A program made the translations under genes and the position numbers. A stretch of DNA of 64,000 nucleotides from positions 186,001 through 250,000 of the IMG/VR virus record IMGVR_UViG_3300023296_000874. One strand, given 5' to 3'. Of the stretch, positions 4,700 to 61,485 are shown piece after piece (within the stretch, counting starts at the first letter, position 1; each line of letters begins with the position of its first letter). The notes beneath the pieces were generated by a model. The model worked only from the letters and a program-made list of their open reading frames with translations. It did not search any database and was not told the origin of the DNA.

Positions 4700-5179
4700 T
4701 CAGTATTTCTTACCGTCGAGCGTGGCTCGAGTACCCAACGCCCGGTCCACCCAATCGCTCCGGACGCCCCAGTTCAGATGCTGGTTCTTGCCCATGTGGT
4801 GAGCGTAGTGCGTAGTCGCGTGCTGCAAGGCCCATGCGGGGTTCTTGTGTGCCTTCCGATGCACTCGGATGTAGCTGAGGCCACTCAGTACGAGCCCAAG
4901 CACGAACCCGGCAATGAACCATCCGCCGAGCAGTAGGAGCGGGAGGTGGATCGCTACAGCGAAGGTCACCCAAAGGGCCTCACGTCGGGATCCGATGTCG
5001 TGCATGTTCTGACGGCGGCAGTTTCGGTGGTGCTCTCGGAAGTGGAACGCGAACATGTGGTCTTTCTTGAACCCAAACGGGTGAAGCAGCCATCTGTGGA
5101 TCGCATACTCAACGACATGCCCGTAAACCCAAGCAAGTCCAAGACCAACCACCGCCAATAGAACCATTGAAGCCTCCAC
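4700..5179 (-). CDS. Fatty acid hydroxylase / sterol desaturase family membrane enzyme
   Basis: His boxes EYAIHRWLLH, HFREHH, VHRKAH, HYAHH; NWGV..W.DRALGT; TM segments. Confidence 0.8.
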   Translation of the reverse strand: MEASMVLLAVVGLGLAWVYGHVVEYAIHRWLLHPFGFKKDHMFAFHFREHHRNCRRQNMHDIGSRREALWVTFAVAIHLPLLLLGGWFIAGFVLGLVLSGLSYIRVHRKAHKNPAWALQHATTHYAHHMGKNQHLNWGVRSDWVDRALGTRATLDGKKY

Positions 5180-5290
5180 TTCCTCCGCTGTCCGCGTACT
5201 GACTTCATTGTATGGGACACATGGATAAACCGCGATGAGTTCTCTGAGAAGCTCCTCATCTCACTCGTTACCTCGGAGCCGAAGCCGGAG

Positions 5291-16589: not shown

Positions 16590-16605
16590 CTACAAAAGGA
16601 TTAGG
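16590..16605 (-). promoter_or_regulatory. Conserved 16-bp motif (putative late promoter)
   Basis: ctacaaaaggattagg, 29 nt upstream of 16561. Confidence 0.65.
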
Positions 16606-25394: not shown

Positions 25395-25410
25395 CTACAA
25401 AAGGATTATG
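25395..25410 (-). promoter_or_regulatory. Conserved 16-bp motif (consensus copy)
   Basis: ctacaaaaggattatg, 46 nt upstream of 25349. Confidence 0.75.
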
Positions 25411-25471: not shown

Positions 25472-25487
25472 CTACAAATGGATTATG
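25472..25487 (-). promoter_or_regulatory. Conserved 16-bp motif (second, tandem copy)
   Basis: ctacaaatggattatg. Confidence 0.7.
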
Positions 25488-31566: not shown

Positions 31567-32460
31567 TCAGCGGGTGATGCTCAGGCGGGTGAGGCCACGG
31601 GGGTTGAAAGCACCGATGCCGAGGTTCTCGAAGACGCTGAACCCGATGGTCCGGTTCTTCGGGTCGTCAGCACTGAGCACCGTGAGCTCGGTACGCACCG
31701 GGATGCGTCCGAAGTACTCAGGCTCGCAACACACGTACACGGTACCTGCGCTCACGAGTCGAGTCACGATGATCTGGGCTCCCCAGAGGTTCGCCTGGAG
31801 TCCGGTGCGCAGCAGTGCTGCCTGGCTCTCCATGTCGAGTACATCTCGGCCCCACTTACGGATGTCCGTGAAGTCGCGGGCGTTGATGAACACTCGAGCA
31901 ACGCGAAGGTCGTGTGCTTCGATCAGCGAGAAGGCGTCAGCCATCACGCTTGGAGTGATCGGAGCGGTGACGGTCACGTCAGCGTTCGTCTGGCCAGCCA
32001 GGTCGTCGAAGCCGGATACCGCAATGGCATCGAGCACCTGGAAGACGCGGGTGTCTTCCTCAACCTGAATGGCAACCTTCGCCAGGTCCTGGGCGCGTTC
32101 GATCAGATCGAAACGACGCTCCTTGATCTGGGTCAGGGGGATCTCGGGGTTGGTGGCGATCTCAAAGAGGGGGAAGATCACACGGCGCGGCTTGGTGATC
32201 GCGAGAATGTTCTCGCCTTCCTCACCAATGACGTACGCGGTCACGTCCGGGTCCTTGTCGTAGATCGGCAGTGCGCCGTCGGGGAGCTGCTCCACCAGGA
32301 AGGTCTTGCGGCCTACCGAGGTGTAGTCGCGCCGAGTACGGAGCGGCTGGATCATGGAAGCTGCCAGACGCTGCCTTCCGGCAGCAGTCTTGAGAAGCTC
32401 CGAGATCACCTGCTGCTTGGTAGCGTTGCTGATCTCTGGGTTCTGGGTGTTCACAGGCAT
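31567..32460 (-). CDS. Major capsid protein (HK97 fold)
   Basis: 297 aa; GRQRLAASMIQPLR..RDY..VGRK..LVEQLP.GALP.YD, PLFEIATNP, EED..VF; recalled resemblance to BpSp-like jumbo-phage MCPs; follows protease/scaffold/decoration. Confidence 0.9.
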   Translation of the reverse strand: MPVNTQNPEISNATKQQVISELLKTAAGRQRLAASMIQPLRTRRDYTSVGRKTFLVEQLPDGALPIYDKDPDVTAYVIGEEGENILAITKPRRVIFPLFEIATNPEIPLTQIKERRFDLIERAQDLAKVAIQVEEDTRVFQVLDAIAVSGFDDLAGQTNADVTVTAPITPSVMADAFSLIEAHDLRVARVFINARDFTDIRKWGRDVLDMESQAALLRTGLQANLWGAQIIVTRLVSAGTVYVCCEPEYFGRIPVRTELTVLSADDPKNRTIGFSVFENLGIGAFNPRGLTRLSITR

Positions 32461-33188: not shown

Positions 33189-34415
33189 TCAGCGGAAGTC
33201 CCCACTCACGTCGGGATCGCTCTTCCAGAGCTTGCTGAGGTCGCCAAGTCCGTTCTCGGATGCTGTCTTGGAAACGCCACCCAGCTTGGCTACGCCGCGC
33301 TTGGGTGCGGAAGCAGTCTTGCCTGCCTCAGCGGATGCGAAGATGTCGTTCAGCATGTCGCCCTCGGGGAGGGTGTCCATTGCCGGAGGAGTCAGCTCAA
33401 TCTCGAGGCCGGAGTCCAGAAGCGGGGTGGCAACCACCTCGGCGGCGAGGGCGTCGGCAGTGGCGTCGGCAGCTACGGAAGCTTCCTTGTCCTCACCCTT
33501 GTCCTCTTCCTTCTCGTCCTTGTCGTCGTCCTTGTCATCCTTGTCGTCGTCCTCGTCATCGGAGGCAACGGTCAGGGTGTCAAGTCCAGCGGTCAGGGCG
33601 GCAAGGCGGTCCTCTACGGATGCCTCCTTGCTCTCTTCCTCTTCCTTCTCGTCCTCGTCGTCGCCAGCACCCTTCTCGAGGGTCGCAAGGCGAGCCTCAA
33701 GAGCGGCAATCACGTCGCCGTGTGCAGAGGCGTCAGAGGCGCTCTTGATGGAGTCGAGCTCGGTACGGAGGGTGTTCAGGGCGGAAGCTTCCTTGCCGTC
33801 CTCTTCCTTCTCGTCCTTCTCGTCGTCGGTGGCTACAACGGCAGAAGCTTCCTTCTTGTCGTCGCCCTCGTCCTCATCCTTCTTGCCCTTCTGGTGCTTC
33901 TTGAAGGCATCGGGCACTTCACCCGCACCAACGATGCGAGCAATGGTAGCGTCGAGGCTACCGGGTCCCATGTTCATGAAGTCGCGAGCCTGGTTCTGGA
34001 TGAACCCTTCGTCGCCTTCGGGGAACATGGCGTGTGCCAGGTGGAGAGCCTTGTGGGCCAGCTTGCGGGCACCCTCAAAAGCTGCCTGCCGGTCGGCAGA
34101 AGCCTGCTTGAGCGCCTCGTCTGCTGCAGCCTTGTCATAGGAGGGCGGGATCTGCTCCCGGTCCTTCCATGTGCTGTCCAGGAAGTTGCCAAGGCCAACC
34201 TCGTTCCGTCCCTTCTCGTACTCCTGCTTCCAGGTGTCGACGGGCTGAACATCTTCTGCCCAGGAACTCGGGTTGCCATTCTCGTAGTGCGTCACAGAGG
34301 GCTCAGATCCAGGGCGTCGCTCCTGATTCATGAGGTAAGGGTCAGCCGACTTCCCAAAAGAGCCGGTCTTGGGGTTGTAGCCCCGCTCCGTGAGCCGCGT
34401 GCGTGTGTCGGCCAT
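33189..34415 (-). CDS. Capsid scaffolding/core protein (acidic, repetitive)
   Basis: D/E/K low-complexity tracts with coiled coils; 8 KxAS motifs; lies between protease and MCP. Confidence 0.75.
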   Translation of the reverse strand: MADTRTRLTERGYNPKTGSFGKSADPYLMNQERRPGSEPSVTHYENGNPSSWAEDVQPVDTWKQEYEKGRNEVGLGNFLDSTWKDREQIPPSYDKAAADEALKQASADRQAAFEGARKLAHKALHLAHAMFPEGDEGFIQNQARDFMNMGPGSLDATIARIVGAGEVPDAFKKHQKGKKDEDEGDDKKEASAVVATDDEKDEKEEDGKEASALNTLRTELDSIKSASDASAHGDVIAALEARLATLEKGAGDDEDEKEEEESKEASVEDRLAALTAGLDTLTVASDDEDDDKDDKDDDKDEKEEDKGEDKEASVAADATADALAAEVVATPLLDSGLEIELTPPAMDTLPEGDMLNDIFASAEAGKTASAPKRGVAKLGGVSKTASENGLGDLSKLWKSDPDVSGDFR

Positions 34416-34457
34416 GATATTTGCCTCCGAAAGGTTGTCCAACTCGGACGATAGGGG

Positions 34458-34473
34458 CTACAAAAGGATTATG
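34458..34473 (-). promoter_or_regulatory. Conserved 16-bp motif (consensus copy)
   Basis: ctacaaaaggattatg, 43 nt upstream of 34415. Confidence 0.75.
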
Positions 34474-34509
34474 AGAGTCTCGAGAGGAGATGGAGTGCAG
34501 CCCAGTACT

Positions 34510-34839
34510 TCATCTCTTCTTCATCCACGGGTACTTTCTATGTACCCCTCTGCTGCGCTGTCGCTTTCTGTATCTCTTAGTCGAAGGCTTGCGCTCAATA
34601 CGCTCCCGCCTACGCTTGTACTTCTTGCCCGCTGGTGTACGCGTCCATCGCCTGCGCTTTCTGCGCTCGTTCGACGGCTTGCGACGCCAGCGTGTCTTCC
34701 TCCGAATGCCACGGCGCTTGCCTGCATCGGATCGAGGTTTCTTTGCCGTCACATCGCTCGCCAACTCCATCATTTCCGTGCCCAGCTCGATGCTGTGCAT
34801 GGCAAGACGGATGGCGAGGCTGGTCAGGCATACTTTCAC
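34510..34839 (-). CDS. Protamine-like very basic protein
   Basis: 41 of the last 77 residues are K/R; GTG overlaps the protease TGA; fills the gap to the next promoter. Confidence 0.6.
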   Translation of the reverse strand: MKVCLTSLAIRLAMHSIELGTEMMELASDVTAKKPRSDAGKRRGIRRKTRWRRKPSNERRKRRRWTRTPAGKKYKRRRERIERKPSTKRYRKRQRSRGVHRKYPWMKKR

Positions 34840-36323
34840 TCAGGGGAGCCGTAGCTGAAGAGGTTTCCCTTGTAGATGAGCTGTCGGGCTACATCCATGG
34901 GGATCTTCCGGATTCCCGCTGCCTTGCCAATGGCATTGAGGTAGTCGAGTGGTGATTCAAAAGGTCCGGTGCCGCCTACCTTCGAGATGGCCTCGTTGGC
35001 TCTACGGCTAAGGGTCTCACCGCCGCGCTCGGCGTCAATGAAGTGGCTCAGGGCCAGGATCTCACGTCCGGAGAAGCCCTTGTCGGAAAGGCTCTTCCAA
35101 CCGGCAGTCTTGACACTCACCAACCCCTCGTAGAGGCGGTAGAGCATCAGGTCGCCACCGTAGCCAGCGTATCGGCTCTTGAAAGCGGAGAAGGCAAAGG
35201 TGCTGCGCACCAAGTTCTCGTTTCCGTTTTCCTTGCCGGTGTCTTGCTTGCCCTTCTCAACTCCACGCATCTCGTCACGGAGCTGGTTCCGTACCTGATC
35301 GCGGATCACCTGCTTCATGTCGTCGGTGATGTCGTCAATGGGGCTCTTGTCCGGTGTCGCGGGCGCTGCGGGCTTGTCCTCGCCGCCTTCCCCGTCTCCA
35401 CCATCGCCGCCCGCATCGTCGAAGTTAAAGCCACCCTGGCGGTGTACGAAGCTCTCAACCTTGTTGAGCGCTGCCTGTACCTCCGTGAGGTCAGAAGCGG
35501 CACGCTGCATAGCGTCTGCGTCCACAACGTTCACGGTCTCGAACGCAGCCTTGATGGTCTCAGCACTCACATCAGCGGCTTCCAGGATGTTCCGCATGAC
35601 GGCACCCTTGAAGGCTGGGTTGCCTACCCACGAGGCCTCAATGAATGTGACGCTGTCCTCATCATCCTTGTGGCCGCAGAGCTCGGCAATCTTGCGACGC
35701 TTACCCTTCTTGTCGAAGAAGTGGTTGCCCTTCATGTACTTGATGTGCTCGCACATCTGAGTATCGTCTTCAGCTACGTTTCCACACTTCGTGCAGACGG
35801 TGTAGTCAACCGTGCAACCCATGGAGAGGGTCGTGATCTCGCCACTCTTGATGTCCCGTACCAGGTCCTTGTGCTTGCGGTCCGTGGCTACGAGGATGTC
35901 AACGTAGACGGTCTCGCCAAGGTCGCGGGCTACTGCGTCAACAATCTTGCCCTTGCTCAGCTCGGGAATTTGAATGTGCTCAACGTAGTTCTCTGCACCA
36001 CGGAAGGTTCCGTAGGTGGCGAGGAGCAGGTCACGCTCCCAGGCATCTTCGTTGTTGTTGACGTACTTCTCAGTCTTCGCGGTGATCACGAAGGGCCAAC
36101 CACGGTCGTTGACGGGAGAAGCTTCTACGTCAACAGAGGCGATGATCGTGCAGTGCGTGAGAAGGAACTTCTCTGGGTTGTACTTGCTGGCGATCATGTC
36201 CGCGCCAGCCTGTCGGCTCATCTTGGAGCTGCCCGTCATGCCGTCCTTGCGAACAGCGGTCCAGTCATCAGCCTCGAGAGAGTGCCGAACAATCTTCGCC
36301 TTTGCGTATCGAAGCATTGACAT
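34836..36323 (-). CDS. Prohead (maturation) serine protease with Zn-finger insert
   Basis: NNNEDAW, NYVEH (His), TLSMGC (Ser), CTKCG...CEH, FIEASWVGNPAF. Confidence 0.75.
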   Translation of the reverse strand: MSMLRYAKAKIVRHSLEADDWTAVRKDGMTGSSKMSRQAGADMIASKYNPEKFLLTHCTIIASVDVEASPVNDRGWPFVITAKTEKYVNNNEDAWERDLLLATYGTFRGAENYVEHIQIPELSKGKIVDAVARDLGETVYVDILVATDRKHKDLVRDIKSGEITTLSMGCTVDYTVCTKCGNVAEDDTQMCEHIKYMKGNHFFDKKGKRRKIAELCGHKDDEDSVTFIEASWVGNPAFKGAVMRNILEAADVSAETIKAAFETVNVVDADAMQRAASDLTEVQAALNKVESFVHRQGGFNFDDAGGDGGDGEGGEDKPAAPATPDKSPIDDITDDMKQVIRDQVRNQLRDEMRGVEKGKQDTGKENGNENLVRSTFAFSAFKSRYAGYGGDLMLYRLYEGLVSVKTAGWKSLSDKGFSGREILALSHFIDAERGGETLSRRANEAISKVGGTGPFESPLDYLNAIGKAAGIRKIPMDVARQLIYKGNLFSYGSPE

Positions 36324-37825
36324 TAGCTACTCCTCGGAGTGCGGAGGTGGTCAAGTACATCCACGAGGCGGTTGTACGCTTCGCGGTTGAAGAGCCCGTC
36401 AGCGGTGTTGGCGCTGAGCAGGAAGAGTGCATCCCCGAAACCGTGGGTCTCAAGGTCATGGTGGAACTGGTCTGCCAAAACAGGCGAGGCGGTTCCGTCA
36501 CGTACCTCTTCATATAGAAGGTTCATGCCATCTGAACCGAGTACCTCTCGAAGCTCAATGGCTGAGGGGTTCATGCTGGCAACTACGCGCTGGAAGCCTA
36601 CTGCGTAGCGGGCATGTCGGTCAGCGTCGATGTCCTTCTGTACGCCAATCAGCCGTCCAATCTCCCTATCATCCACATCGAGCAGCTCACTTACCGAAAG
36701 GTCGGCAACGTAGGAGTAGATGCCCTCAATGGCTTCATCCGTGTAGTGGAACTGGTCTGCCTCGTCCATCACAGCCTTTCGGATGCGGACGCCAAGGCTT
36801 CCCTTGTGGCGGTTGAAGACGGAGCCATGTCCAACCAAGGAGTCGCGGAGCAGCTCGTAGAGCTCTTCGTCCGCTTCCTTCTTGAGCTGTCGCGTGGGTA
36901 GCTCATCCTCGTGAACGTGCATGTCACCCGAGTGGAGTCCCACTACGCCGGTTGCAGCGTCATTGTGGTAGATCTCGTGGTCCGGATGGTTCTTCTTCAG
37001 GTACGCAAGCACCTGGTTCTTCAGCGCGTCCCACTTCGAGTTCTTCTGAGTCGCAGCCGCAGTCTTCAGCGCCGCAAGGAGCATGTCGTCTTCGGCACCC
37101 GGAGGCACTCCGAACCCACTCTCCTCCACGTACCCAGGAAGCCCCTCGATGTCTGAGGGCTTGATACAGAACAGGCATTCGGGACACACGAAGAGGCGGG
37201 TGTGCTTCTTGTAGTTGGTCTTCTGGAGGTTCGCCCCACACTTGGGGCAGTCGGGCAGGCCGTCATCGAGCTCCCGCCGATTCATGCGGTACCTGCGTCC
37301 GGGGGCTGTCCAGTAGATTGCTTGGCGTACACTGTGGTCCGGGGCCTTGCACACGGAGGTGATGGCTCGGAAGCTGTCGACGCGGCTCAGGCCCTTGAAG
37401 GCACACTGCTGGGCCATTACCTGGAGCTTGGCTTGGGCGTCGAAGTAGTGAGCAGCGAGATGCTCTGCGCGGTCTACAAAAGGAGCCGCTGAGGCTCTCT
37501 TGGGCCAGGCGTAGCTGTATCCAACGGCGGTGCCGTCTTCAATGTGGCTCTGCGCAATGTCGTAGCTGCTGTAGGAGGTGTCGTACTGCGGCGGGATCGT
37601 GCGAACGTAGTTCGGGTTCGCGATCACCAGCTCATCCGCACTCACACGCTCATTGCCCCATGGGAACTCAGCGTCAACGAATCCGATTCCGGGGTGTACG
37701 GCGGTCACCGTCCCACTCACATCGGAAGCCCCCCCGTCGAGGCTGTTCCTTCGGTAAACGACGTCGCCTCTTGCGAAGTTCTTCGCCAAGAGCCAGTAGT
37801 CAACGAATGCTTTCTTGTCAGCCAT
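36323..37825 (-). CDS. Head-operon protein with SH3-like N-domain and Zn ribbon
   Basis: FARGDVV...GTVTAVHPGIGFVDAEFPWG; CPKC...CPEC; TAATG coupling to the protease. Confidence 0.6.
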   Translation of the reverse strand: MADKKAFVDYWLLAKNFARGDVVYRRNSLDGGASDVSGTVTAVHPGIGFVDAEFPWGNERVSADELVIANPNYVRTIPPQYDTSYSSYDIAQSHIEDGTAVGYSYAWPKRASAAPFVDRAEHLAAHYFDAQAKLQVMAQQCAFKGLSRVDSFRAITSVCKAPDHSVRQAIYWTAPGRRYRMNRRELDDGLPDCPKCGANLQKTNYKKHTRLFVCPECLFCIKPSDIEGLPGYVEESGFGVPPGAEDDMLLAALKTAAATQKNSKWDALKNQVLAYLKKNHPDHEIYHNDAATGVVGLHSGDMHVHEDELPTRQLKKEADEELYELLRDSLVGHGSVFNRHKGSLGVRIRKAVMDEADQFHYTDEAIEGIYSYVADLSVSELLDVDDREIGRLIGVQKDIDADRHARYAVGFQRVVASMNPSAIELREVLGSDGMNLLYEEVRDGTASPVLADQFHHDLETHGFGDALFLLSANTADGLFNREAYNRLVDVLDHLRTPRSS

Positions 37826-40122: not shown

Positions 40123-40138
40123 CTACAAAAGGATTATG
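40123..40138 (-). promoter_or_regulatory. Conserved 16-bp motif (consensus copy)
   Basis: ctacaaaaggattatg, 41 nt upstream of 40082. Confidence 0.75.
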
Positions 40139-61469: not shown

Positions 61470-61485
61470 CCACAAAAGGATTATG
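61470..61485 (-). promoter_or_regulatory. Conserved 16-bp motif (putative late promoter)
   Basis: ccacaaaaggattatg, 26 nt upstream of 61444; contains the asnB TAA. Confidence 0.7.

What the first reader, a model, noticed from the sequence alone, without database searches (positions are those of the whole stretch)
34510..34839. Protamine-like protein translationally coupled to the prohead protease
Seen: a 109-aa ORF whose GTG overlaps the protease stop. It has a leader (SLAIRLAMH), a short acidic spacer ending DVTA, then 77 aa with 41 K/R. Established: protamine-like core proteins condense DNA in adenoviruses, baculoviruses and some giant viruses; they are not standard in tailed phages. Inference: a packaged DNA-neutralising core protein released by cleavage.
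Basis: partly seen in the sequence, partly recalled or inferred. Interest (0 to 1): 0.6.

Follow-up and report, generated by a model that had tools for sequence, protein, structure and literature searches.

The report
Polybasic protein in phage head operon
A real, conserved 109-residue gene at the end of the prohead-protease operon of a salt-lake jumbo phage encodes an extremely basic protein with a non-basic helical leader; it is confined to one small clade of huge phages and is probably an internal head, nucleic-acid-binding protein, but packaging and cleavage are untested.

Summary
ORF 34510-34839 (-) is 109 aa, with 27 R and 16 K, and 41 K/R in its last 77 residues. Its GTG overlaps the TGA of a 495-aa ORF whose N-domain has the T4 gp21 / herpesvirus protease fold.

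It is a real gene. Nine distinct syntenic homologues exist in metagenomic huge-phage contigs of 36-64% GC. Third codon positions are saturated, and dN/dS is 0.21 for the closest pair. No other frame stays open. Gene callers missed three of the homologues.

It always lies just upstream of the acidic scaffold gene and starts at or within about 25 nt of the upstream stop. All 9 close-clade loci carry it; all 6 more distant relatives examined lack it. No Pfam, PHROG, PDB or fold match was found, and homology to bS21 was tested and rejected.

The N-terminal 20-35 residues are variable, non-basic and predicted helical. The basic core (aa 44-106) is as conserved position by position as the protease domain, so it does not behave like a protamine.

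The best reading is an accessory internal head protein of the T4 internal-protein type, with a removable leader. That is inference only. Bulk DNA neutralisation looks unlikely, because the Shine-Dalgarno is weak or absent and the gene sits last in its operon. Interest is moderate.

The parts
34510..34839 (-). Polybasic protein gene: 109 aa, GTG start, TGA stop, net charge +35
   Evidence: Conserved in 9 lineages. Under purifying selection.
34744..34839 (-). N-terminal leader, aa 1-32. It is non-basic, predicted as a helical hairpin (helices 2-15 and 17-32), and holds S-I-E18 and G-T-E22 as candidate protease sites.
   Evidence: AF2 on the 6-row alignment. Leader identity to the window is 22-57%, against 46-70% for the core. 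An [ASG]-x-E motif occurs in 8 of 9 leaders; shuffles average 4.6, P=0.015, a post-hoc test.
34711..34743 (-). Variable basic linker, aa 33-43. It is predicted disordered and is shortened or absent in L011, L013, L014 and P0005.
34522..34710 (-). Conserved polybasic core, aa 44-106. Invariant positions: G44, W51, R59, R60, K61, R62, W65, G71, Y74, E82, R91, G98, Y103, W105. Predicted helices: 56-66 and 69-82 (pLDDT 94-96), 87-96 and 99-102.
34836..34839 (-). GTGA start/stop overlap with the protease gene, consistent with termination-reinitiation coupling. No clear Shine-Dalgarno lies upstream.
   Evidence: The same 4-nt overlap occurs in L005, L008 and L013, and in L006 with an inserted gene. 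L014 has TAGAGTG. L011 has a 14-nt overlap and L009 a 17-nt overlap.
34836..36323 (-). Prohead protease, 495 aa. The N-domain (about aa 45-260) has the T4 gp21 / herpesvirus assemblin fold. The C-terminal extension of about 235 aa is probably scaffold-like.
34458..34473 (-). 16-mer CATAATCCTTTTGTAG between the basic gene and the scaffold gene. It is a candidate phage late promoter and marks the end of the protease transcription unit.
   Evidence: Present at the same place in all 8 loci that have DNA, across 36-64% GC. The window holds 12 copies with at most 2 mismatches, all on the - strand, against 0 expected.
40123..40138 (-). The nearest upstream copy of the same 16-mer. It is the putative start of the unit holding the 306-aa, 211-aa, 258-aa and 500-aa genes, the protease and the basic gene.
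   Evidence: The operon structure is inferred, not measured.
33189..34415 (-). Acidic scaffold-like protein, 408 aa from ATG 34415, net charge -46. GGAGG lies at 34424-34428. It is always the next gene downstream.
31567..32460 (-). Major capsid protein (HK97 fold family), included for context
   Evidence: phrog_2522 at 2e-55 and PF05065 weak

Best explanation
The ORF encodes an accessory internal head protein that arose once in a small clade of huge (jumbo) phages.

Proposed mechanism:
1. It is transcribed late, as the last gene of the portal-side/protease unit.
2. It is translated by re-initiation at the stop of the upstream gene, so it is made in modest amounts.
3. The variable, non-basic helical leader of about 20-35 aa masks the polycationic body, targets it to the scaffold/protease core of the prohead, or both. 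The gp21-type prohead protease probably removes the leader after a Glu.
4. The conserved Trp/Tyr-studded polybasic core (net +17 to +37) stays in the head bound to the packaged DNA, as the T4 internal proteins do, and probably leaves with it at infection.

Shown: the gene is real, it is constrained, its position and coupling are conserved, and the neighbour is a gp21-fold protease. Inferred: incorporation into the prohead, cleavage, DNA binding and ejection.
For: The gene is real and constrained.

In all 9 lineages it sits between the protease (or a gene inserted after it) and the scaffold gene, inside the head-assembly module.

Its start sits at or within about 25 nt of the upstream stop, with a weak or absent Shine-Dalgarno. 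The next gene has its own conserved promoter-like motif and a GGAGG.

The upstream protease has the T4 gp21 fold. Characterised gp21-type proteases cleave after Glu and remove short N-terminal targeting peptides: the T4 capsid-targeting sequence of about 10 aa (PMC8442874), and in SPN3US an A-x-E motif with propeptides of 20 and 24 aa (PMC10052503).

The architecture is two-part. The leader is fast-evolving, non-basic and predicted helical. The basic core is positionally conserved and has invariant aromatic residues, typical of nucleic-acid stacking.

8 of 9 leaders contain [ASG]-x-E.
Against: There is no proteomic, structural or expression evidence for any family member.

No other ORF in the genome shares the leader, so no common targeting signal is visible.

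The [ASG]-x-E enrichment is post hoc and weak. One member has only L-x-E, and the specificity of this protease is unknown.

Six more distant relatives examined, with the same module, lack the gene, so it is dispensable for head assembly.

Small basic bS21 genes also cluster with prohead proteases without being virion proteins.

Strict positional conservation would fit a defined RNA or protein partner as well as DNA.
Confidence: 0.4

Rival explanations
1. It is a late-expressed cytoplasmic nucleic-acid-binding protein that is not packaged. One version is a ribosome- or mRNA-binding factor working like phage-encoded bS21 to favour translation of late structural genes. Another is a DNA-binding factor acting during packaging.
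For: bS21 is small, highly basic and made of two helices. In 310 of 900 bS21-encoding phages a prohead protease lies within ten genes, and the gene is transcribed late with the structural genes (PMC9723584). The core has a confidently predicted helix pair (aa 56-82, pLDDT 94-96). Its positional conservation resembles that of ribosomal proteins. A short K-P-S-T-K-R stretch resembles the bS21 K-P-T-T-E-R stretch.
Against: PF01165 finds nothing in the whole genome at E<=10, nor in any of the 9 members. hhalign of A3 against E. coli bS21 and against an 84-sequence bS21 profile gives probabilities of 0.1% and 0.3%. The family profile finds no PDB chain, ribosomal proteins included, at E<=10. bS21 has no 20-35-aa non-basic leader. 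In the published cases bS21 lies on the opposite strand to the structural genes, whereas this gene is co-oriented and coupled.
Confidence: 0.2
2. It is an assembly cofactor of the prohead core. The polycation pairs electrostatically with the polyacidic scaffold (net about -45), or regulates the protease, and is degraded or expelled with the scaffold at maturation. Under this reading it never meets the DNA.
For: It is always immediately upstream of the acidic scaffold gene. The charges are nearly complementary, +35 against -46. It is co-translated with the protease.
Against: Relatives without the gene have scaffolds that are just as acidic (-41 to -76), so its presence does not track scaffold charge. 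The complex prediction for scaffold plus basic protein gave no verdict (see Tried and rejected). Invariant Trp, Tyr and Gly positions are not needed for simple charge pairing.
Confidence: 0.15
3. This is the first reader's strong form: a true protamine-like core protein present in thousands of copies that neutralises a substantial share of the genome's charge and condenses the DNA, like adenovirus protein VII.
For: The body is 53% K/R. It has a leader-plus-basic-body layout like a precursor. The gene is in the head module. Adenovirus VII is a protamine-like DNA-condensing core protein (PMC4189039).
Against: The estimated genome is about 318 kb (257.5 kb at 81% completeness), or about 636,000 phosphates. 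Neutralising 10% of them would need roughly 1,800 copies of a +35 protein. Yet the gene has a weak or absent Shine-Dalgarno, depends on re-initiation, and is last in its unit, while the neighbouring scaffold gene has its own promoter-like motif and a GGAGG. The core evolves under positional rather than compositional constraint. Sister phages with similar or larger genomes lack the gene. The habitat is salt lakes, where counter-ions are abundant.
Confidence: 0.1
4. It is not a gene: a chance open frame in GC-rich DNA, or the shadow of a gene on the + strand (ORFs 34390..34854 or 34490..34858).
For: Two long + strand ORFs overlap it in the window. Gene callers skipped it in three relatives, and in L014 they called a 59-aa ORF on the opposite strand instead.
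Against: The + strand frames carry stops in the relatives. Only this frame is open in all of them, including genomes of 36-45% GC. Substitutions show a third-position pattern and dN/dS is 0.21. Fourteen residues are invariant.
Confidence: 0.01

Closest known systems
[quoted passage not shown]
   Same: They are small, non-essential, highly basic proteins of a tailed phage with a gp21-type prohead protease. They are built into the scaffolding core, carry a short N-terminal targeting peptide removed by that protease, and are kept with the DNA (PMC8442874).
   Different: No sequence similarity was detected: none of the 9 members gives a PHROG or Pfam hit. The present protein is far more basic (53% K/R in the body) and mostly predicted as extended helices rather than a globular fold. 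Its leader is 20-35 aa rather than about 10. It is encoded inside the protease operon. Packaging and cleavage are unproven here.
Adenovirus core protein VII (and Mu); baculovirus P6.9; sperm protamines
   Same: They share extreme K/R content, association with packaged dsDNA and, in adenovirus, synthesis as a precursor trimmed by the viral maturation protease. Protein VII is described as protamine-like and DNA-condensing (PMC4189039).
   Different: These are eukaryotic viruses or cells with no homology to this protein. Their sequences are constrained mainly by composition, whereas this core is conserved position by position with invariant W, Y and G. The expected copy number here is probably low.
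Short-propeptide head proteins of giant phages such as SPN3US (gp45, gp225) and phiKZ-like phages
   Same: These are giant-phage head proteins with N-terminal propeptides of 20 and 24 residues, cut after Glu in an A-x-E motif by a gp21-like protease (PMC10052503). Here 8 of 9 leaders carry [ASG]-x-E at comparable distances from the N-terminus.
   Different: The SPN3US substrates named in that paper are much larger (gp225 22.3 kDa, gp45 50.3 kDa). The lineage is different, and no cleavage data exist for this clade.
Phage-encoded ribosomal protein bS21
   Same: It is small, highly basic, made of two helices, encoded close to the prohead protease and capsid genes of large phages, and expressed late (PMC9723584).
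   Different: Homology was tested and not found. bS21 has no non-basic leader and, in the published clades, lies on the opposite strand.

Membership tests
T4-type internal head proteins (IPI-III) | The phage uses a T4 gp21 / herpesvirus-assemblin-fold prohead protease | tested here: met
   The AF2 model of protease aa 1-270 has T4 gp21 (5jbl) as its best match (Z 9.8, rmsd 2.9, 126 aligned). phrog_18299 hits at 4e-13.
T4-type internal head proteins (IPI-III) | A short N-terminal capsid-targeting peptide removed after Glu | tested here: inconclusive
   All 9 members have a non-basic helical leader. [ASG]-x-E occurs in 8 of 9 (P=0.015 against shuffles, post hoc). There are no cleavage data, and no other ORF in the genome shares the leader.
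T4-type internal head proteins (IPI-III) | Sequence homology to the IP families | tested here: not met
   No PHROG or Pfam family matches any of the 9 members. tblastn of the phage collection found nothing.
T4-type internal head proteins (IPI-III) | Present inside mature, DNA-filled heads | not testable with these tools
   No carrier phage is cultured, and no proteome was found in the literature searches.
Protamine-like viral core proteins (adenovirus VII/Mu, baculovirus P6.9) | Extreme Arg/Lys content in a small protein | tested here: met
   41 K/R in 77 residues; net +35. The other members run from +24 to +33.
Protamine-like viral core proteins (adenovirus VII/Mu, baculovirus P6.9) | Constraint on composition rather than position (low-complexity, fast-evolving sequence) | tested here: not met
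   The core (aa 44-106) is 46-70% identical to the window, with 14 invariant positions including W51, W65, Y74, Y103 and W105. That is as conserved as the protease domain, at 65-73%.
Protamine-like viral core proteins (adenovirus VII/Mu, baculovirus P6.9) | Stoichiometric coating and condensation of the packaged genome | not testable with these tools
   Only indirect evidence exists: a weak or absent Shine-Dalgarno and a last-in-operon position argue for low abundance.
Ribosomal protein bS21 (PF01165), including phage-encoded copies | A match to the Ribosomal_S21 profile | tested here: not met
   There is no match in the genome at E<=10 and none in the 9 members. hhalign probability is 0.1-0.3%. 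No PDB ribosomal chain matches at E<=10.
Ribosomal protein bS21 (PF01165), including phage-encoded copies | A small basic two-helix protein encoded near the prohead protease and expressed late | tested here: inconclusive
   Proximity is met, and a helix pair is predicted at aa 56-82. Expression timing is unknown, and no RNA run holds the sequence.
Prohead (capsid maturation) protease, for the upstream ORF named in the finding | Assemblin / gp21 fold with conserved His and Ser residues, encoded between portal-side genes and the scaffold and capsid genes | tested here: met
   Fold match. Invariant H57, S63, H116, S123 and S167 across 31 homologues. Synteny with the scaffold and MCP genes. Which residues are catalytic was not assigned.

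The most novel reading that the evidence does not exclude
A tailed phage clade has independently evolved an adenovirus-VII-like system. A polycationic protein is made as a precursor with a masking or targeting leader, loaded into the prohead through the protease/scaffold core and trimmed by the gp21-type protease. It is then kept on the packaged genome through a defined Trp/Tyr-containing DNA-binding motif and delivered with the DNA into the host, where it could shield the entering genome from nucleases or defence systems.
Probability: 0.25. Interest if true: 0.75.

Novelty: new variant of a known kind. Interest (0 to 1): 0.5.

Why it matters
If the protein is packaged, it would be the first protamine-grade polycation documented in a tailed-phage head. 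It would give a simple, testable model for three questions: how huge phages load small cargo through the protease/scaffold core, how DNA-bound proteins affect packing and ejection of genomes above 300 kb, and whether injected DNA-coating proteins protect against host defences.

There is also a practical lesson. Gene callers missed the gene in 3 of 8 related loci that have DNA, and in one they replaced it with a spurious opposite-strand ORF. An exhaustive profile search of 1.84 billion proteins therefore saw only four cluster representatives. Small, compositionally extreme phage genes are under-counted in protein databases.

Tried and rejected
- Complex prediction of the scaffold (A5) with the basic protein (A3): no verdict, score 0.00. 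This counts neither for nor against binding.
- Fold searches with the AF2 model of the basic protein: Foldseek PDB gave nothing. BFVD gave only E>=4.9. VIA-align wide gave only generic helical hairpins on residues 1-45, with Z<=5.4. ESM Atlas by shape gave no hit and by features no usable hit.
- Sequence searches: nothing in Pfam, PHROGs or PDB. tblastn of 50,697 phage records found no match, although the low-complexity filter may contribute. Two IMG/VR scans found none beyond the own record. The metagenome scan only re-found known lineages.
- Leader profile against all 2,142 ORFs of the genome: no second ORF carries the leader.
- Idea that the basic gene compensates for an unusually acidic scaffold: rejected. 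Scaffold net charge is -42 to -46 with the gene and -41 to -76 without it.
- Idea that the basic domain is fused to the protease by a programmed -1 frameshift at the GTGA: rejected. The junction varies across lineages: 4-nt overlap, 1-nt spacer, 14- and 17-nt overlaps, a 25-nt gap, or an intervening gene. In the window the basic frame has a stop immediately before the GTG.
- bS21 homology: rejected.
- Population variation in four other salt-lake runs: the ORF is identical wherever it is covered, so within-population selection could not be assessed.
- No alternative genetic code was needed or used.

Full report
**Setting.**
The window is bases 186001-250000 of a 257.5-kb IMG/VR virus record, 59.5% GC and estimated 81% complete. 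It is a jumbo phage. The same sequence occurs in many salt-lake metagenomes from separate studies. The genes around the finding all lie on the - strand and form a head-assembly module:
- a 500-aa ORF (36323..37825);
- a 495-aa protease (34836..36323);
- the 109-aa ORF (34510..34839);
- a 408-aa very acidic scaffold-like protein (33189..34415);
- a 206-aa protein;
- the major capsid protein (31567..32460; phrog_2522 at 2e-55).

**The observation.**
- 109 codons, with a GTG start at 34839 that overlaps the protease TGA as GTGA;
- 27 R and 16 K against 8 D/E;
- 41 K/R in the 77 residues after DVTA.

The upstream ORF is a prohead protease.
- It hits phrog_18299 ('head maturation protease') at 4e-13.
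- Its nearest annotated relatives are the head maturation / prohead proteases of Tunturiibacter phage Tunturi_5 and Rhodococcus phage E3.
- An AlphaFold model of residues 1-270, built from a 31-sequence alignment, is closest to T4 gp21 (5jbl: Z 9.8, rmsd 2.9 over 126 residues). Herpesvirus proteases follow at Z about 8.

**Is it a gene?**
Yes, on five grounds.
1. In this GC-rich genome, spurious Arg-rich ORFs are common, but they have almost no lysine and GC3 near 0.4. This ORF has 16 K and GC3 of 0.68, close to the 0.72-0.78 of its neighbours. It is the only ORF of that kind among 2,142.
2. The word search found two homologues, at 67% and 55% identity. An exhaustive profile search of 1.84 billion representatives found three more.
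3. Inspection of the unannotated gap of about 400 nt between protease and scaffold in three further contigs revealed the same ORF, missed by the gene callers. This gives nine distinct lineages from genomes of 36% to 64% GC (alignment A3).
4. Only this frame is open in all of them. The two long + strand ORFs of the window carry stops in the relatives.
5. Nucleotide identity is 0.6-0.77 at codon positions 1 and 2 and 0.24-0.47 at position 3. For the closest pair (L011/L013), NG86 gives dN/dS of 0.21, against 0.18 for the protease and 0.30 for the scaffold. In all other pairs dS is saturated.

**Anatomy.**
The protein has two parts that evolve very differently.

The N-terminal 20-35 residues are non-basic (net 0 to -5). 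AlphaFold predicts a helical hairpin there (helices 2-15 and 17-32). This part is only 22-57% identical to the window.

A short variable basic linker follows. Then comes a core (aa 44-106) that is 46-70% identical to the window. That matches the protease catalytic domain (65-73%) and exceeds the scaffold (50-66%). Fourteen positions are invariant in all nine sequences: G44, W51, R59-R60-K61-R62, W65, G71, Y74, E82, R91, G98, Y103 and W105. Residues 56-82 are predicted as a helix-turn-helix-like pair with pLDDT of 94-96.

This is positional constraint, not merely compositional. It points to a defined binding mode, such as aromatic stacking on nucleic acid or a specific partner, rather than the loose polycation behaviour of protamines.

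**Context and expression signals.**
The gene is always the one immediately upstream of the scaffold gene. Its start relative to the upstream stop is as follows:

| Locus | Upstream gene | Junction |
|---|---|---|
| window, L005, L008, L013 | protease | 4-nt overlap (GTGA or ATGA) |
| L006 | inserted 272-aa PLP-enzyme-like gene | 4-nt overlap |
| L014 | protease | 1-nt spacer (TAGAGTG) |
| L011 | protease | 14-nt overlap |
| L009 | inserted 104-aa gene | 17-nt overlap |
| contig encoding P0005 | intein-bearing protease | 25-nt gap |

Upstream Shine-Dalgarno sequences are weak or absent.

The scaffold gene is different. It is preceded in every locus by a GGAGG and by a 16-mer, CATAATCCTTTTGTAG, conserved across the whole GC range. 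The window holds 12 copies of this 16-mer with at most 2 mismatches, all on the coding strand, against 0 expected by chance. I read it as a phage late promoter.

On that reading, the basic gene is the last cistron of the unit that starts at the copy at 40138. It would be translated by termination-reinitiation, in amounts tied to the upstream gene and well below those of the scaffold. The operon structure is inferred and was not measured. No RNA run holds the sequence.

**Distribution.**
The protease family is very large: 1,383 proteins at E<=1e-10, on contigs up to 484 kb.

The basic gene is present in all nine loci examined from the close clade. For the five relatives with an alignable protease N-domain, identity to the window's is 65-73%.

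It is absent from all six more distant relatives examined:
- L023, L024 and L026, with protease N-domain identity of about 57-60%;
- the 485-kb phage LR745208;
- Tunturi_5;
- an IMG/VR contig (L004).

In those relatives the scaffold gene follows the protease directly or after an unrelated acidic ORF. On a protease tree the carriers fall on one side of a single branch with support of 86/88, consistent with a single gain. The gene is thus an accessory addition to an otherwise complete head module.

**What it is not.**
No member matches any Pfam or PHROG family. The family profile finds no PDB chain at E<=10. No fold library gives a meaningful match.

The most serious known look-alike is phage-encoded ribosomal protein bS21. 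It is small, highly basic and made of two helices. It is transcribed late, and in 310 of 900 bS21-encoding phages a prohead protease lies within ten genes (PMC9723584). I tested this directly:
- PF01165 finds nothing in the six-frame genome at E<=10, nor in any member.
- hhalign of the family against E. coli bS21 and against an 84-sequence bS21 profile gives probabilities of 0.1% and 0.3%, aligning only a six-residue K-P-S-T-K-R stretch.

Membership is rejected. The precedent still shows that lying next to the protease does not by itself prove a virion role.

**Most likely mechanism.**
The best-supported reading is an internal head protein of the T4 internal-protein type.

T4 IPI-III are non-essential, highly basic proteins. 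They assemble into the scaffolding core and lose a capsid-targeting peptide of about 10 residues to gp21. About 1000 copies stay with the DNA (PMC8442874).

In the giant phage SPN3US, a gp21-like protease cuts after Glu in A-x-E motifs. Two of its head proteins have N-terminal propeptides of only 20 and 24 residues (PMC10052503).

The present case has matching features:
- The protease has the gp21 fold.
- The protein has a leader of the right length.
- 8 of 9 leaders contain [ASG]-x-E, against a shuffle mean of 4.6 (P=0.015, a post-hoc test). In the window the candidates are S-I-E18 and G-T-E22.

I put this reading at about 0.4. Every step after 'the gene is real and sits here' is inference.

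**The protamine version.**
The stronger form, bulk neutralisation and condensation, seems unlikely (about 0.1), for four reasons:
- About 636,000 phosphates would need roughly 1,800 copies for even 10% neutralisation, yet the translation signals point to low output.
- The constraint is positional rather than compositional.
- Sister phages with similar or larger genomes do without the gene.
- The habitat is rich in counter-ions.

**Other rivals.**
A cytoplasmic RNA- or ribosome-binding or DNA-binding late protein gets 0.2. A core-assembly cofactor that pairs with the polyacidic scaffold and leaves with it gets 0.15. The second is weakened because scaffold charge does not differ between carriers and non-carriers. 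The complex prediction gave no verdict and is not used as evidence.

**Novelty and score.**
The family is new: it has no homologue of known function and fewer than a dozen members. The probable role is a variant of a known kind, internal head proteins with protease-removed leaders. A conserved 53% K/R protein inside a tailed-phage head operon would surprise specialists moderately and is directly testable, but no functional evidence exists yet. Interest is 0.5.

No alternative genetic code was used. 

Noticed in passing
window 34458-34473 (-); also 40123-40138, 25395-25410, 25472-25487, 16590-16605, 61470-61485 and six weaker copies, all on the - strand: The 16-mer CATAATCCTTTTGTAG occurs 12 times with at most 2 mismatches, all on the coding strand upstream of genes, against 0 expected by chance. 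It is conserved at the same intergenic place in relatives of 36-64% GC. It is a candidate clade-wide late promoter or regulatory motif.
   Followed up: partly
L009:2-1435 (protease of a relative); contig encoding P0005 (1402-aa protease, no DNA held): The prohead protease of some relatives carries intein-like insertions. L009 has an insert of about 181 aa after the invariant E-L-C motif, with Intein_splicing/Hint hits below the curated cut-off. The P0005 contig has a 1402-aa protease with several Hint/intein hits.
   Followed up: partly
L006:4211-5029: A 272-aa PLP-dependent-enzyme-like gene (PF00291, 2.7e-9) is inserted between the protease and the basic gene in one relative. The basic gene then overlaps that gene's stop instead. 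L009 has a different 104-aa insert at the same junction, so the junction tolerates gene insertions.
   Followed up: no
L011:4948-5250, L013:4919-5218, L014:4972-5256: Gene callers left the basic ORF uncalled in three relatives. In L014/L015 they called a 59-aa ORF on the opposite strand (5084-5263) inside it. Protein databases therefore under-represent this family.
   Followed up: yes
window 33500 and 33805 (scaffold gene), also 33928, 33984, 35997: Within the salt-lake population, the only indels in the 3.1 kb laid are in-frame length changes in the scaffold's acidic repeats: a 6-nt insertion and a 9-nt deletion. The basic ORF shows no variant in the four runs laid.
   Followed up: no
L007:2-1952: An ENA scaffold joins a LysR-like N-terminus and a DUF423-like membrane segment to the C-terminal half of the phage protease in single called genes. 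It is probably a chimeric assembly. The Logan contig L008 of the same phage shows the ordinary protease end.
   Followed up: partly
window 34836-35540 (protease aa 261-495): The protease carries a C-terminal extension of about 235 aa with an acidic Gly/Asp-rich linker and a conserved C-terminal domain. The 283-287-aa proteases of Tunturi_5 and L004 lack it. In Rhodococcus phage E3 the protease is an 895-aa protein. The extension may be a scaffold-like targeting domain.
   Followed up: no
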